Part shown: piece after piece, positions 50,911-56,779 of the stretch
Layout of the letters: each line of letters starts with the position of its first letter
How positions within the stretch are numbered: position 1 is the first letter of the stretch
Assembly (NCBI RefSeq): GCF_947568905.1
Contig: NC_079165.1
Coordinates: forward strand, 25,792,001-25,856,000
Source: Ostrea edulis
Lineage: Eukaryota
Direction: 5' to 3'
DNA length: 64,000 bases
Notes under the pieces: model-generated
Databases searched by the model: none
Seen by the model: the letters and a program-made list of their open reading frames with translations, nothing else
Told to the model about the DNA's origin: nothing
Translations under genes and position numbers: made by a program

Positions 50911-52296
50911 ATGGCACACAATTCACGGATTGATAAACCTATTTGCCCCATATGCTGTGATGATTTTAAAAATCCTAAATTTCTACCATGTCGCCATACT
51001 TACTGCAAATCCTGCATTGTCAATTTGTTCAACACTGCAACAATGCATGGCGAAATAGCCTGTCCTCTCTGCCGTAAAGTTTTCTACTTAGATGAAGAGG
51101 CCATCGATAAATTACTAGACAATTACTTTGTCCCACTAAAAGACAAATCGATACCGACACTATTCAGCTGTAGTGTTTGTCTAACAGAAGCTCGCCTAAA
51201 AGCATGTCAGCATTGCTCGGAACACCTATGCTTGGACTGTAGTGCATCTCATCGACTTGCGATGAAACTAAGCGGGGTAGACTGTAGCAATGACACTTCA
51301 GATGGAGACGATATCATCGAAGCAGACCACTCAGACGACTTTCAATTTCAAACGCCGACCCCAGTGTTTCTGTCCAGTCATCCAATGAAAGTGCAACTCA
51401 ATGCATCACTCGTATCGTCTTTTAACGTGCAATCTATGTATAGTGCTTTCGATCACGGTGACAGTGGACTATTTCCGATTCGCTGTATACGTCGGAGTGG
51501 ATGCGACAGTTATTCGGTTCTCCTTAATCTTGGTCCGGAAGTGGTTGAATTCGATATGATGGGAAGGGAAATCAACAGATTTTCCCTCCAGGATGGTGTA
51601 AGTGATATTATATATGCACCTAACGGTGATTTATTGTACTCAAGTGTTGGAGACAGAATTATCTGGAGAAAGGATTGTCAAAGCGACACTCGCGTCTTTA
51701 CACATAGCTCGCATTATCAGCCCTTCTCTCTGTCATGCTTCCAAGATGGACGTATAGTCTCCGGTGGCCCGACTTATCATCAGTCAGATGGTAATGAACA
51801 TGGGGCAATTATCATCTATGACCAGCATGGAAAACTAATTAGAGAAATCGTACAGAGTGCTGATGGATTATTTGTGAAATTCCCCGTATCGATATCAGTC
51901 AGCACAAGTAACAAAATATGCGTGGCTGACAAAGACTCTCACTGCGTTTTCGTCTTTTCAGAAAATGGCGTCATCCTTTCATTGTACGACGGAAATTTTG
52001 GATTGGAACAATGGGATCGTTCTCAATTTTTGCCTTCTGCTTTATGCCACGATTCCGAAGGAAACATTATTGTGGCAAACATATTGGACGGTATGCTACA
52101 TGTGTTGTCCTCAAACGGAGATTTCCAGGGCTATGTTTTAACGAAGAACTTAGAAGGCTCTAAACGGCCATGTGCACTCCACGTTGATGACGAAAACAGA
52201 ATCTGCGTCGGGAATATGGATGACAGTGGGATAAGGATTTACGAAATTTCGAGTTTCAATAACATGTTAGAAGAATTTCATACTAATTATATATAA
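50911..52296 (+). CDS. RING-HC / B-box-1-like / NHL beta-propeller protein A (TRIM-NHL-like, no coiled coil), 461 aa
   Basis: CPICC..LPCRHTYCKSC..CPLCR RING; CSVC-x8-CQHC-x4-CLDC-x3-H; acidic linker; NHL-type blades (PVSISV..ICVAD, PSALCHDSEGNIIVAN, PCALHVDDENRICVG). Confidence 0.92.
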   Translation: MAHNSRIDKPICPICCDDFKNPKFLPCRHTYCKSCIVNLFNTATMHGEIACPLCRKVFYLDEEAIDKLLDNYFVPLKDKSIPTLFSCSVCLTEARLKACQHCSEHLCLDCSASHRLAMKLSGVDCSNDTSDGDDIIEADHSDDFQFQTPTPVFLSSHPMKVQLNASLVSSFNVQSMYSAFDHGDSGLFPIRCIRRSGCDSYSVLLNLGPEVVEFDMMGREINRFSLQDGVSDIIYAPNGDLLYSSVGDRIIWRKDCQSDTRVFTHSSHYQPFSLSCFQDGRIVSGGPTYHQSDGNEHGAIIIYDQHGKLIREIVQSADGLFVKFPVSISVSTSNKICVADKDSHCVFVFSENGVILSLYDGNFGLEQWDRSQFLPSALCHDSEGNIIVANILDGMLHVLSSNGDFQGYVLTKNLEGSKRPCALHVDDENRICVGNMDDSGIRIYEISSFNNMLEEFHTNYI

Positions 52297-52712
52297 ACTA
52301 CTGTAGACTAATTAACTATTACCATACTAATTATATATAAACTACTGTAGACTAATTAACTATTACCATACTAATCATATATAAACTACTGTAGACTAAT
52401 TAACTATTACCATACTAATTATATATAAACTACTGTAGACTAATTAACTATTACCATACTAATCATATATAAACTACTGTAGACTAATTAACTATCGCCA
52501 TACTAATCATATATAAACTACTGTAGACTAATTAACTATCACCATACTAATTATATATAAACTACTGTAGACTAATTAACTATTACCATACTAATTATAT
52601 ATAAACTACTGTAGACTAATTAACTATTACCATACTAATCATATATAAACTACTGTAGACTAATTAACTATCACCATACTAATTATATATAAACTACTGT
52701 AGACTAATTATC
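52279..52712. repeat. 44-bp minisatellite (~10 copies) flanked by a 17-bp direct duplication
   Basis: Unit tactaatYatatataaactactgtagactaattaactatYacca; acatgttagaagaattt at 52262-52278 and 52713-52729. Confidence 0.92.
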
Positions 52713-53110
52713 ACATGTTAGAAGAATTTTAGTAAAGAATTCACTCGTACATTTACTTCAGGTATATTCCGAACGGTTTAAAATAAAGATAATCTTTATT
52801 TCAAGAACTCAAATATTTAGTCTACTCACTACATGATATAATAAGATTTACACACAGAAACAACAATAGATGCACTGATGATTGTGGTATTTTATTTCAT
52901 AAAAATAAAAATGTACAAAGATTTTGTTTGGAGTGATTGATATCCAACAGTGGATAAGCTGTTTGTAGTGCATGCATTATGTGCAGCTGCTGAGGAATAG
53001 CCTGAATTCATGTAAACAATGATGATGACAAAGCAAATGCATTTCAACCTACTTCTGCTCACAAGTATTGAAGTATTATATCACACATCATATCTATCTA
53101 TACATGAATA

Positions 53111-54769: not shown

Positions 54770-54928
54770 GTAAACTAATAGTATTTTCAACTTTCGTTTC
54801 GTGTTGGGGATTTTCGTGTATCAAATCACTCGGGTGTAAACATCTCACCTTGACTGTATAAAATCCCTATGCATAAAAAACGGTGACGAAAACTTTTGTA
54901 AACTACTCGTTAGGATCCCGAAGTACAG
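54770..54928. promoter_or_regulatory. Putative compact bidirectional promoter with non-coding first exons of genes B and C
   Basis: Minus-strand donor AC|gtaagt at 54770/54769 and plus-strand donor CAG|gtaaac at 54928/54929 are only ~160 bp apart. Confidence 0.5.
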
Positions 54929-55309
54929 GTAAACTGAGGAATAATACACAATCACATTTATCAGTACTGTTTATGTTCATGATATAAAAAAAAGATATAG
55001 CCGGAAATTTTCTTTTTAGATTTCCTACTTTCGTTTGACATTAACGGTCATTAAGTGTGTCTGTATTGATGTATACAATGACATAGCTTTGGAATTCTTT
55101 AATCATGTTCTGTGACATTCATGTAAACTAAATACTACGGACGAGCAATCAGGATATTTTTGTATGAGGTAAAGACTTTGAACAGATTTTGAAAGCAATT
55201 AATGATCATGTAAACGTTTGTATCTCTATTCGTCAAAATCACATTCAGACGGCATTCGATTTCCCGTTAAATTGAACTATTCACTTTTTCTTTAGAAATT
55301 CAAGGGATA

Positions 55310-56779
55310 ATGGCAGAAACATGCGAGGACGGGAACATGTGTGCCATTTGCTGGGACGACTTCTTCCAGCCCAAAATTCTGCGATGTCGTCACACATTTT
55401 GCAAACCTTGTCTACACGGTTATATAAAGAAATCTGACAATTCCACAGAGATAAAGTGCCCAGTCTGTCGCCAGACACAAATCCTCGACGGGAAAGGCTT
55501 GAATGGTTTACTTGACAATTACTTTGTTCAGCTTCGCCCGCCTGAACAACCGGAACTGTTGTGCTGTAGTATATGCTATGAAGAGACCATTCTAAAGACA
55601 TGTTCCCATTGTTCCGAAAAGCATTGTCCAAGTTGCAGAGAATCCCATAAACTAGCTTTGAAGTTAGCTGGAGAGAGTTACGAACACAGTTCTGACTCGG
55701 ACGAAAATTCCACGGTAGATCTAGATCTGGATGATAGAGATGTAACAGATGAAGCAAACGTACCAATCAATCTTCTTTTTGCAGGTCAAGCAATACGGAC
55801 GCAGTTTAATGTAAAACTCTTAACTGCTTTTAAAGTATCCTCTATGATGAATAGCGCTGAAGAAAATAGAAATCCTCCAATATACACAATATTTCCATTG
55901 GCGGATGATAGATATCTGGTGGTCCTTAACACTGGACCGGAAATCGTGGAATACAAACCAGATGGGACCGAAATAAACCGGTCTACATTCCAGTCCGGTA
56001 TTGCTGACATCATAGAAACGCCGGACAAACGTCGACTGTTTGTGCATCCTGCTGATTGTTTACTTTTGGAGATCACCATTCGAGGAAGTATATCAATCTT
56101 TGCTCCCTGTAAAGGTTGTCGACCGATCTGTCTATCTTCATTTAAGGATGGACGTATAGTCGTGGCAGGTTTTGTCGAACGTCGTGTAAAGAAGGGGTCA
56201 CCGGAAGGGGGAGAAGATGAGGAGGAAGAGGAGGAGGACGACAGAAAAGGAATGTTGCTTATCTATAACAAAGATGGAAAGTTAATGAAAGAAGTCATGG
56301 AGGGCACTGACGGACCAATTCTGCGGTTTCCAATGTGCACATCTGTCAGTCATTTCAATAACACTATATGTGTTGCTGATCAAGACTCAAAATGCGTGTC
56401 TATTTTTAGCGAAACGGGTGAGCTATTGACTCGTTATGACGCGGGGCAGAGTTTTAGACAATTTGGACTTTTTTGGAATCGTACAGAATTTGTTCCACTT
56501 TGCTTGTGTCACGATCCCGATGGAAATATTATCGTTGCTAATACAGTGGATGGTGTACTTCACGTTTTGCAACCAGATGGGAAATTTCTAGGCTATATTT
56601 TAACAAGAGATAGCGAACAATTTGGTCGTCCTTCAGGAATAATGATGGATGCCCACAATCGAATTTGGTTAGGTGATCGCCTTGATGGGAGAATTAGAAT
56701 TTACGAAATTTCTAGCTACAAAAACTCTTTCCATCAACGAGACTCTTTCAATCATTTTGCTGATAGGTTCGTTGCATAA
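55310..56779 (+). CDS. RING-HC / B-box-1-like / NHL beta-propeller protein C, 489 aa
   Basis: CAICW..LRCRHTFCKPC..CPVCR; CSIC-x8-CSHC-x4-CPSC-x3-H; acidic linker; NHL blades (PLCLCHDPDGNIIVAN, PSGIMMDAHNRIWLGD); poly-E loop insert. Confidence 0.92.
   Translation: MAETCEDGNMCAICWDDFFQPKILRCRHTFCKPCLHGYIKKSDNSTEIKCPVCRQTQILDGKGLNGLLDNYFVQLRPPEQPELLCCSICYEETILKTCSHCSEKHCPSCRESHKLALKLAGESYEHSSDSDENSTVDLDLDDRDVTDEANVPINLLFAGQAIRTQFNVKLLTAFKVSSMMNSAEENRNPPIYTIFPLADDRYLVVLNTGPEIVEYKPDGTEINRSTFQSGIADIIETPDKRRLFVHPADCLLLEITIRGSISIFAPCKGCRPICLSSFKDGRIVVAGFVERRVKKGSPEGGEDEEEEEEDDRKGMLLIYNKDGKLMKEVMEGTDGPILRFPMCTSVSHFNNTICVADQDSKCVSIFSETGELLTRYDAGQSFRQFGLFWNRTEFVPLCLCHDPDGNIIVANTVDGVLHVLQPDGKFLGYILTRDSEQFGRPSGIMMDAHNRIWLGDRLDGRIRIYEISSYKNSFHQRDSFNHFADRFVA

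What the first reader, a model, noticed from the sequence alone, without database searches (positions are those of the whole stretch)
50911..56779. Trio of divergent RING / single B-box / NHL genes lacking the TRIM coiled coil
Seen: three intact single-coding-exon ORFs (+,-,+), each with RING-HC, a DNYF motif, one B-box-1-like finger (A and C lack the usual final His), a short acidic linker of only ~45-55 aa, and an NHL-type propeller. There is no B-box 2 and no room for a coiled coil. Known: TRIM-NHL ligases dimerise through the coiled coil; malin (NHLRC1) is an intronless RING-NHL protein with neither B-box nor coiled coil; TRIM32 has an intronless RING-B-box-CC-NHL CDS. Inference: an intermediate, possibly undescribed E3 ligase subfamily. 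The propellers have diverged strongly, suggesting different substrates and possibly hetero-assembly.
Basis: partly seen in the sequence, partly recalled or inferred. Interest (0 to 1): 0.72.

Follow-up and report, generated by a model that had tools for sequence, protein, structure and literature searches.

The report
Coiled-coil-less RING–B-box–NHL ligase genes, oyster
Three neighbouring, intact and conserved oyster genes (seen spliced in a sister species) encode TRIM2/3-like ubiquitin ligases that keep the RING, one B-box and the NHL propeller but have lost the second B-box and the dimerising coiled coil; they belong to an unnamed family found so far only in oysters, mussels and scallops.

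Summary
Three intact ORFs lie at 50911-52296 (+), 53111-54550 (-) and 55310-56779 (+). Each has:
- a TRIM2/3/56-type RING, whose "DNYF" is the NNFF/TNFF post-RING motif of those proteins;
- one B-box-1-type finger;
- an acidic, Ser-rich link of 45-49 residues from the finger's His to the propeller, disordered in the models of A and B (C not modelled);
- a six-bladed NHL propeller.

There is no B-box 2. The AlphaFold models of A and B contain no long helix.

Spliced contigs from a closely related species show that upstream exons exist but are non-coding. No missing exon can therefore supply a coiled coil.

The genes are not orphans. The same compact architecture recurs in at least 39 clusters (50% identity) of an exhaustive search. 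Every named member comes from an oyster, mussel or scallop, and all are called "uncharacterized". The B-C head-to-head pair and its neighbours are syntenic in Saccostrea.

Best reading: functional RING E3 ligases derived from RBCC-NHL ancestors by loss of B-box 2 and the coiled coil. This parallels malin, but probably arose independently.

It is weak for A versus C (42%). Hetero-assembly has no support.

Verdict: a new variant of a known kind, of moderate interest. The scan also noted another TRIM-NHL array elsewhere in this genome; I did not test it.

The parts
50911..52296 (+). Gene A, complete CDS in one exon (461 aa). RING res 10-74 (50938-51132), B-box-1-like finger res 85-120 (51163-51270), acidic disordered linker res 121-159 (51271-51387), six-bladed NHL propeller res 160-452 (51388-52266).
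50895..50910 (+). Splice acceptor AG (50895-50896) and a 14-nt leader with an in-frame stop directly before the ATG of A. A contig of the related species starts exactly at 50897. The upstream exon was not located.
52279..52710 (.). 44-bp minisatellite, 9.8 copies, that begins in the last codons of A and supplies its last 5 residues and stop. The related species' contig lacks it (skips 52261 to 52713).
53111..54550 (-). Gene B, complete CDS in one exon (479 aa). RING res 7-71 (54338-54532), finger res 78-120 (54191-54319), linker res 121-156 (54083-54190), NHL-type propeller res 157-424 (53279-54082), disordered tail res 425-479.
54563..54767 (-). 5'-UTR intron of B (GT..AG on the minus strand). 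The acceptor lies 12 nt before the ATG.
54768..54926 (.). Segment used as a non-coding first exon by B (minus strand) and as an alternative non-coding first exon by C (plus strand), so the two genes have antisense-overlapping 5' ends.
   Evidence: (X2 record 12)
55064..55166 (+). Alternative non-coding first exon of C, spliced GT..AG to the acceptor at 55294. The leader carries in-frame stops.
   Evidence: (X1 record 6)
55310..56779 (+). Gene C, complete CDS in one exon (489 aa). RING res 9-73 (55334-55528), finger res 84-119 (55559-55666), acidic linker res 120-162 (55667-55795), NHL propeller res 163-473 (55796-56728).

Best explanation
A, B and C are functional members of a bivalve-restricted family of RING E3 ubiquitin ligases. 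The family descends from TRIM2/3-like RBCC-NHL proteins and has lost B-box 2 and the coiled coil.

Proposed working, all inferred:
- The TRIM2/3/56-type RING binds an E2~ubiquitin. The Zn ligands, the I/V after the first Cys, the Pro in C-P-x-C, and an Arg after the last Cys that I take for the 'linchpin' are all conserved.
- The six-bladed NHL propeller, which is net acidic, selects the substrate. That substrate is more likely a protein than RNA.
- A flexible acidic, Ser-rich tether links the two parts.
- Without the antiparallel coiled coil the protein cannot form the obligate TRIM dimer. RING activation would then depend on RING or B-box-1 self-contacts, or on several copies binding one multivalent target.

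The three genes arose by DNA-level tandem duplication. All share an intron just upstream of the ATG. B and C have been a head-to-head pair at least since the split from Saccostrea.
For: Shown:
- Intact ORFs.
- RING and NHL identified by sequence and by fold.
- The finger is of B-box 1 type.
- No helix longer than 13 residues, and a low-confidence linker, in the models of A and B.
- Linker of 28-64 aa in all 35 aligned members.
- In the exhaustive profile search, 39 representatives match the whole profile in one stretch spanning 421-498 residues. Canonical RBCC-NHL hits instead place the propeller start at residue 337-395.
- GT..AG joints and non-coding leaders.
- B has 65% orthologues in Saccostrea, C has 67%, with conserved gene order C | B | acyltransferase | peptidase S28.
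- 27 of the 40 printed differences between the window and the related species in B fall on third codon positions (p about 1e-5), and one indel is 6 nt.
- R55, P52 and the Zn ligands are invariant or nearly so.
- Propeller pI 4.7-5.2.
- The family is monophyletic against canonical TRIM-NHL proteins.
Against: - No biochemical evidence of E3 activity, oligomeric state or substrate.
- X1 and X2 are only guessed to be RNA. Their GT..AG joints support that, but they come from a related species (about 3-6% divergent), not the window's own.
- C was not modelled. Its lack of a coiled coil is inferred from collinearity with A.
- A and C lack the eighth Zn ligand of the finger, so it may be degenerate.
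- Net charge is a crude proxy for RNA versus protein binding.
- The restriction to bivalves rests on named members only. Most hits carry no taxon.
Confidence: 0.7

Rival explanations
1. They are ordinary RBCC-NHL (TRIM2/3/71-like) genes, and B-box 2 and the coiled coil are encoded by exons the reader missed.
For: Each gene does have at least one upstream splice acceptor, and B and C have upstream exons.
Against: - The upstream exons carry in-frame stops before the ATG.
- Contigs of the related species run unspliced through the coding regions. C is covered from 55294 to past its stop in one piece.
- The finger and the propeller lie in one continuous ORF only 28-64 residues apart in 35 homologues, including NCBI gene models from Saccostrea, Mytilus and scallops.
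Confidence: 0.03
2. They are bivalve orthologues of malin (NHLRC1), the intronless RING-NHL ligase.
For: - Similar compact plan, single coding exon and no coiled coil.
- Some scallop members have even lost the finger's ligands and are effectively RING-NHL.
- Malin is described as RING plus six NHL repeats, related to TRIM32 (PMC3160408).
Against: - The RINGs match TRIM2/3/56 at E 1e-16 to 2e-13, against TRIM32 at about 3e-5.
- A B-box is present.
- PMC3160408 found malin only in vertebrates and amphioxus.
- No malin sequence was available for a tree, so this was not tested directly.
Confidence: 0.05
3. They act mainly as RNA-binding regulators, like Brat or LIN-41. The propeller would bind mRNA and ligase activity would be secondary.
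For: Brat, LIN-41/TRIM71 and Mei-P26 NHL domains are among the best structural matches.
Against: - The propellers carry net charge -9 to -15 (pI 4.7-5.2). RNA-binding NHL domains use a basic face (my knowledge of those structures, not tested here).
- The RING catalytic features are conserved.
Confidence: 0.1
4. They are fast-evolving immune sensors or restriction factors. Activation would come from clustering on a pathogen surface rather than from a coiled-coil dimer.
For: - A lineage-specific, tandemly duplicated family.
- A tight group of many closely related sequences, of which the one named is from Mytilus edulis.
Against: - No expression or challenge data.
- B and C are conserved one-to-one with Saccostrea at 65-67% and keep their synteny, which is not the pattern of rapid turnover.
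- Third-position excess in B indicates purifying selection.
Confidence: 0.15

Closest known systems
TRIM2 / TRIM3 (class VII TRIM-NHL ligases)
   Same: - RING about 45% identical over 67 residues, including the post-RING LPE-GV-x-N-(F/Y)-F segment.
- NHL propeller is the best sequence match (E 5e-15) and among the best fold matches.
   Different: No B-box 2, coiled coil or filamin domain. The finger-to-propeller gap is 45-49 aa. In canonical relatives the propeller starts some 200 residues further along the protein.
Malin / NHLRC1
   Same: RING plus six-bladed NHL propeller, no coiled coil, compact single-exon coding sequence. It is described as derived from a TRIM32-like protein (PMC3160408).
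   Different: - Malin has no B-box and is reported only from vertebrates and amphioxus.
- The RINGs here are closer to TRIM2/3/56 than to TRIM32, so this is probably an independent loss.
- Malin works with the adaptor laforin; no adaptor is known here.
TRIM32 / Drosophila Thin (Abba)
   Same: The Thin NHL domain is the top Foldseek match of A (E 6e-16, TM by target 0.75). The plan is RING, one B-box and NHL.
   Different: TRIM32 has a coiled coil and needs self-association for activity (as stated in PMC3160408). Its RING is a weaker match.
B-box 1 of PML and KAP1/TRIM28
   Same: These are the best PDB profile matches of the finger, though at marginal E-values (2mvw/6imq E 0.003; 6o5k E 0.015). 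The C-x2-C start is the same.
   Different: The eighth ligand is not conserved. Where one is present it sits 2-3 residues after the His, a spacing more like B-box 2.
Canonical bivalve and lophotrochozoan RBCC-NHL / TRIM45-like proteins (for example P0032, P0045, P0049)
   Same: Nearest non-family sequence relatives. They share the RING type and a B-box 1 at the same distance from the RING.
   Different: They keep B-box 2 (C-x2-H start) about 30 residues after B-box 1, and are 550-830 aa long.

Membership tests
TRIM / RBCC superfamily | N-terminal C3HC4 RING | tested here: met
   Pfam zf-C3HC4 and zf-RING_UBOX above cut-off in A, B and C. TRIM2/3/56 RINGs are the best PDB hits.
TRIM / RBCC superfamily | one or two B-boxes after the RING | tested here: met
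   One finger with seven invariant ligands. hhalign to the B-box 1 of relatives gives 94.7%, E 6e-8. PDB profile hits to PML and KAP1 B-boxes are marginal. Pfam matches are sub-threshold only. No B-box 2.
TRIM / RBCC superfamily | coiled coil of about 100 or more residues after the B-box | tested here: not met
   No helix longer than 13 residues in the models of A and B, and linker pLDDT of 30-45. The gap is 28-64 aa in 35 members. Upstream exons are non-coding. C is inferred by collinearity.
TRIM-NHL subfamily (class VII) | C-terminal six-bladed NHL beta-propeller | tested here: met
   Foldseek top hits are Thin, TRIM2, TRIM3, Brat, TRIM71 and Mei-P26 NHL domains for A and B. The strand pattern gives six blades. 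Pfam NHL passes in A and C.
TRIM-NHL subfamily (class VII) | filamin/ABP280 repeat before the NHL domain (in TRIM2/3/71) | tested here: not met
   No PF00630 hit, and no room between the finger and the propeller.
Malin (NHLRC1) | RING and NHL only, no B-box | tested here: not met
   A B-box-1-type finger is present in A, B and C. Its ligands are lost only in some scallop members.
Malin (NHLRC1) | orthology to vertebrate NHLRC1, sister to TRIM32 | not tested
   No malin sequence was obtainable with the searches left. Indirectly, the RING is closer to TRIM2/3/56 than to TRIM32.
Active RING E3 ligase | E2-dependent ubiquitin transfer | not testable with these tools
   Only conserved sequence features are available: the Zn ligands, I/V14, P52 and R55 after the last Cys.

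The most novel reading that the evidence does not exclude
The family is a natural experiment in running a TRIM-NHL ligase without its coiled coil. On this reading the proteins are monomeric at rest. They become active only when the B-box-1 or RING contacts are brought together by several copies binding one multivalent target. The scallop members that have also lost the finger's ligands would complete a stepwise RBCC-NHL to R-B1-NHL to R-NHL reduction series, showing how a malin-type ligase can arise.
Probability: 0.2. Interest if true: 0.55.

Novelty: new variant of a known kind. Interest (0 to 1): 0.4.

Why it matters
TRIM ligases are thought to depend on the antiparallel coiled coil for dimerisation, and that dimer positions the RINGs and the substrate-binding domains. 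Here a conserved family with spliced transcripts in a sister species and dozens of members keeps a TRIM2/3-type RING, a B-box 1 and an NHL propeller but has no coiled coil. It offers a simple system for asking what the coiled coil is needed for.

It also gives an independent parallel to the origin of malin. In practical terms it provides a name and a domain model for a set of bivalve genes that are currently all annotated 'uncharacterized'.

The finding is not surprising in kind. Domain-loss TRIM-like genes are common in invertebrate genomes.

Tried and rejected
- Full-length Pfam scans did not report a B-box at E up to 1. Scanning the excised fingers, a PDB profile search and hhalign were needed.
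- Five literature searches for a description of this architecture or of bivalve TRIM-NHL families found nothing relevant in the held library. This does not show that none exists in subscription journals.
- No run on record as RNA holds the stretch. The only RNA-like evidence is Logan contigs of a related species, which cannot give strand, ends or expression level.
- The 5' exon of A was not found.
- I first read the join at 52261/52713 as a possible intron. I rejected that: the ends are non-canonical (AC..TC), 17 letters fit either side, and the skipped part is exactly the minisatellite.
- I considered the break at 53226 in B as a splice site and rejected it. One loose end is sequencing adapter, and contigs resume 24 nt further on.
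- The longer scallop members (644-666 aa) were checked as possible coiled-coil-bearing ancestors. Their extra 200 residues are C-terminal to the propeller and match no Pfam family.
- The ESM Atlas gave only longer molluscan and echinoderm TRIM-like clusters.
- The species was not identified. It is an oyster by orthology and synteny with Saccostrea.
- No multimer prediction, no coiled-coil program and no model of C were available or run.
- The window has no N runs, and nothing was taken for human.
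Full report
**1. What is there**

The window holds three intact ORFs at exactly the reported places:
- A, 50911-52296 (+), 461 aa
- B, 53111-54550 (-), 479 aa
- C, 55310-56779 (+), 489 aa

A tblastn of each protein against the window finds only these three copies, and the window has no N. A and C are 38% identical over their whole length. A and B are 24% identical, E 5e-26, also end to end.

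**2. Domains**

*RING.* Pfam finds a C3HC4 RING in all three. The nearest solved RINGs are TRIM3, TRIM2 and TRIM56, at E 1e-16 to 2e-13 and about 45% identity over 67 residues. TRIM32 is far weaker, about 3e-5.

It is part of a shared post-RING segment and not a new motif.

*Second finger.* It has seven invariant ligands in 17 family members, spaced C-x2-C-x8/9-C-x2-C-x4-C-x2-C-x3-H.
- Canonical relatives found in the searches carry a B-box 1 (C-x2-C start) followed about 30 residues later by a B-box 2 (C-x2-H start).
- The family's finger aligns to their B-box 1 profile over all seven ligands (hhalign 94.7%, E 6e-8). It aligns to their B-box 2 only partly (30%).
- Its best PDB profile hits are the PML and KAP1 B-boxes, at marginal E-values of 0.003-0.015.
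- Pfam sees it only below threshold: ANCHR-like B-box in 15 of 17 members, zf-B_box in 10 of 17.
- A and C have no ligand 2-3 residues after the last His.

*Propeller.* Pfam NHL passes in A and C but not in B. AlphaFold models were built for A (mean pLDDT 76) and B (74). In both, Foldseek places the C-terminal domain on the NHL domains of Thin, TRIM2, TRIM3, Brat, TRIM71 and Mei-P26, with TM by target of 0.70-0.79. The strand pattern gives six four-stranded blades. The last blade is closed by a long N-terminal strand, residues 160-172 in A.

**3. No coiled coil**

- In the A model the only helices are 33-42, 62-70 and 108-120. Residues 126-159 have pLDDT below 50 (about 30 over 131-150).
- In B, residues 112-152 have pLDDT 35-49 and no helix exceeds five residues.
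- The distance from the finger's His to the first propeller strand is 45, 48 and 49 residues in A, B and C. Across 35 aligned members it is 28-64, median 45, dominated by D, E and S.
- C was not modelled. Its case rests on collinearity with A.

**4. No hidden exons**

Two runs guessed to be RNA come from a related species whose contigs differ from the window by about 3-6%. They give contigs with canonical joints.
- For C, exon 55064-55166, or alternatively an exon ending at 54926, is spliced GT..AG to 55294. That is 16 nt before the ATG.
- For B, an exon at 54926..54768 is spliced on the minus strand to 54562, 12 nt before its ATG.
- For A, an AG acceptor sits at 50895-50896 and a contig begins exactly at 50897, 14 nt before the ATG.

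All leaders carry in-frame stops, so the upstream exons are non-coding. The contigs then run unspliced through the coding regions. C is covered in one piece from 55294 to past its stop.

The shared position of the intron just upstream of the ATG points to tandem DNA duplication of one ancestral gene rather than to three separate retrocopies.

**5. Are they real genes?**

- B has 65% orthologues in Saccostrea echinata and S. cucullata. C has a 67% orthologue.
- In S. cucullata the C and B orthologues are head to head, 667 bp apart, followed by an acyltransferase and a peptidase S28 gene.
- The window has the same order, with acyltransferase exons at 45622-43304 and S28 near 39800. Here A sits between B and the acyltransferase, and no counterpart of the third Saccostrea gene lies beyond C.
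- Of the 40 best-supported differences printed between the window and the related species within B, 27 lie on third codon positions (p about 1e-5). The one insertion there is 6 nt.

**6. The family**

*Word-index profile search.* It returned full-length relatives only from oysters, Mytilus edulis and scallops (Mizuhopecten, Pecten, Argopecten, Ylistrum). All are named 'uncharacterized protein'. Some UniRef labels carry automatic names such as 'RING finger protein nhl-1'.

*Exhaustive profile search.* I ran it because the claim of restriction rests on absence of relatives.
- 39 representatives at 50% identity match the whole profile in one stretch. That stretch spans 421-498 residues of the protein.
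- Canonical RBCC-NHL hits of about 630-680 aa match in several stretches. Their propeller starts at residue 337-395.
- Of ten of those clusters looked up, the four that carry names are from Argopecten, Ylistrum and Saccostrea.

*Other members.*
- Long scallop members (644-666 aa) carry their extra 200 residues after the propeller, with no Pfam match.
- Several scallop members have lost the finger's ligands and are in effect RING-NHL.

*Tree.*
- The family is one clade against canonical TRIM-NHL proteins (SH-aLRT 92).
- A and C fall in one oyster clade (99) with separate sub-clades. Their duplication therefore predates the split from Saccostrea.
- B sits on a long branch and its position is unsure.

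**7. How it probably works (inferred)**

The RING keeps its Zn ligands, an aliphatic residue after the first Cys, the Pro of C-P-x-C, and an Arg immediately after the last Cys (R55, at least 90% conserved). From general knowledge of RING E3s, these are the E2-binding and linchpin positions, so ligase activity is likely.

The propellers are net acidic (pI 4.7-5.2). This argues, weakly, for protein rather than RNA ligands.

Without the coiled coil the obligate antiparallel TRIM dimer cannot form. Activation would have to come from RING-RING or B-box-1 contacts, or from clustering on a multivalent target. None of this was testable here.

**8. Comparison and novelty**

By the RBCC definition these are TRIM-like, not TRIM: the coiled coil was tested and is not met.

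The closest analogue in plan is malin. It has a RING plus six NHL repeats, no B-box and no coiled coil, is related to TRIM32, and is reported only from vertebrates and amphioxus (PMC3160408). The RINGs here resemble TRIM2/3/56 rather than TRIM32, and a B-box is retained. I therefore read this as an independent, partial reduction. No malin sequence was available for a direct tree.

Five literature searches found no description of this family.

That fits a genome rich in TRIM-NHL domain-loss variants and tempers the surprise.

**9.

- The subfamily claim is supported.
- 'Strongly diverged propellers' holds for B (20% to A, 20% to C). It does not hold for A against C (42%, compared with 48% for their RINGs and 19% for the linker).
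- Hetero-assembly is unsupported.

**10. Verdict**

This is a real, conserved, unnamed family of coiled-coil-less RING-B-box-1-NHL ligase genes in pteriomorph bivalves, with spliced transcripts seen in a sister species. It is a new variant of a known kind and of moderate interest.

Noticed in passing
window 52279-52710: A 44-bp minisatellite (9.8 copies, 97% matches) begins inside the last codons of gene A and supplies its last five residues and stop. It is flanked by a duplicated 17-mer. The related species' contig lacks the array and would end the protein five residues earlier.
   Followed up: partly
window 54768-54926: B and C are head to head. One contig of the related species carries a minus-strand intron on one side of this segment and a plus-strand intron on the other. 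The first exons of the two genes therefore overlap antisense. C also has a second first exon at 55064-55166.
   Followed up: partly
window 54665-54732: A short interspersed repeat in the B/C 5' region. Summed contig depth is about 540 and 330 in two DNA runs, against 5-7 around it, with many contigs diverging on both sides.
   Followed up: no
window 28249-29577: A 29-bp satellite of 45.7 copies, with related 31- and 40-bp arrays beside it. This explains the spike in GC and AT skew at 28-30 kb.
   Followed up: partly
window 39700-45650: Exons of an acyltransferase gene (about 43304-45622, minus strand) and the first exon of a peptidase S28 gene (about 39716-39868). Both are syntenic with the Saccostrea cucullata locus L001.
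   Followed up: partly
window 14466-15413 (-): An intronless 315-aa ORF with a rhodopsin-family 7TM receptor domain (Pfam 7tm_1, E 6e-29).
   Followed up: no
   Followed up: no
B orthologues P0063-P0070, residues about 110-170: B-type proteins carry a basic K/R-rich patch directly after the finger, followed by long (S-D)n runs. This may be a nuclear-localisation signal plus a CK2-type phospho-acidic tract. The window's B has a shortened version. A (V/L)-P-x-x-(L/F) motif precedes the propeller in most members of the family.
   Followed up: no
scallop proteins P0025, P0029, P0033, P0035, P0038: These family members have lost most Zn ligands of the B-box-like finger. Their architecture has converged on RING-NHL, like malin.
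   Followed up: partly
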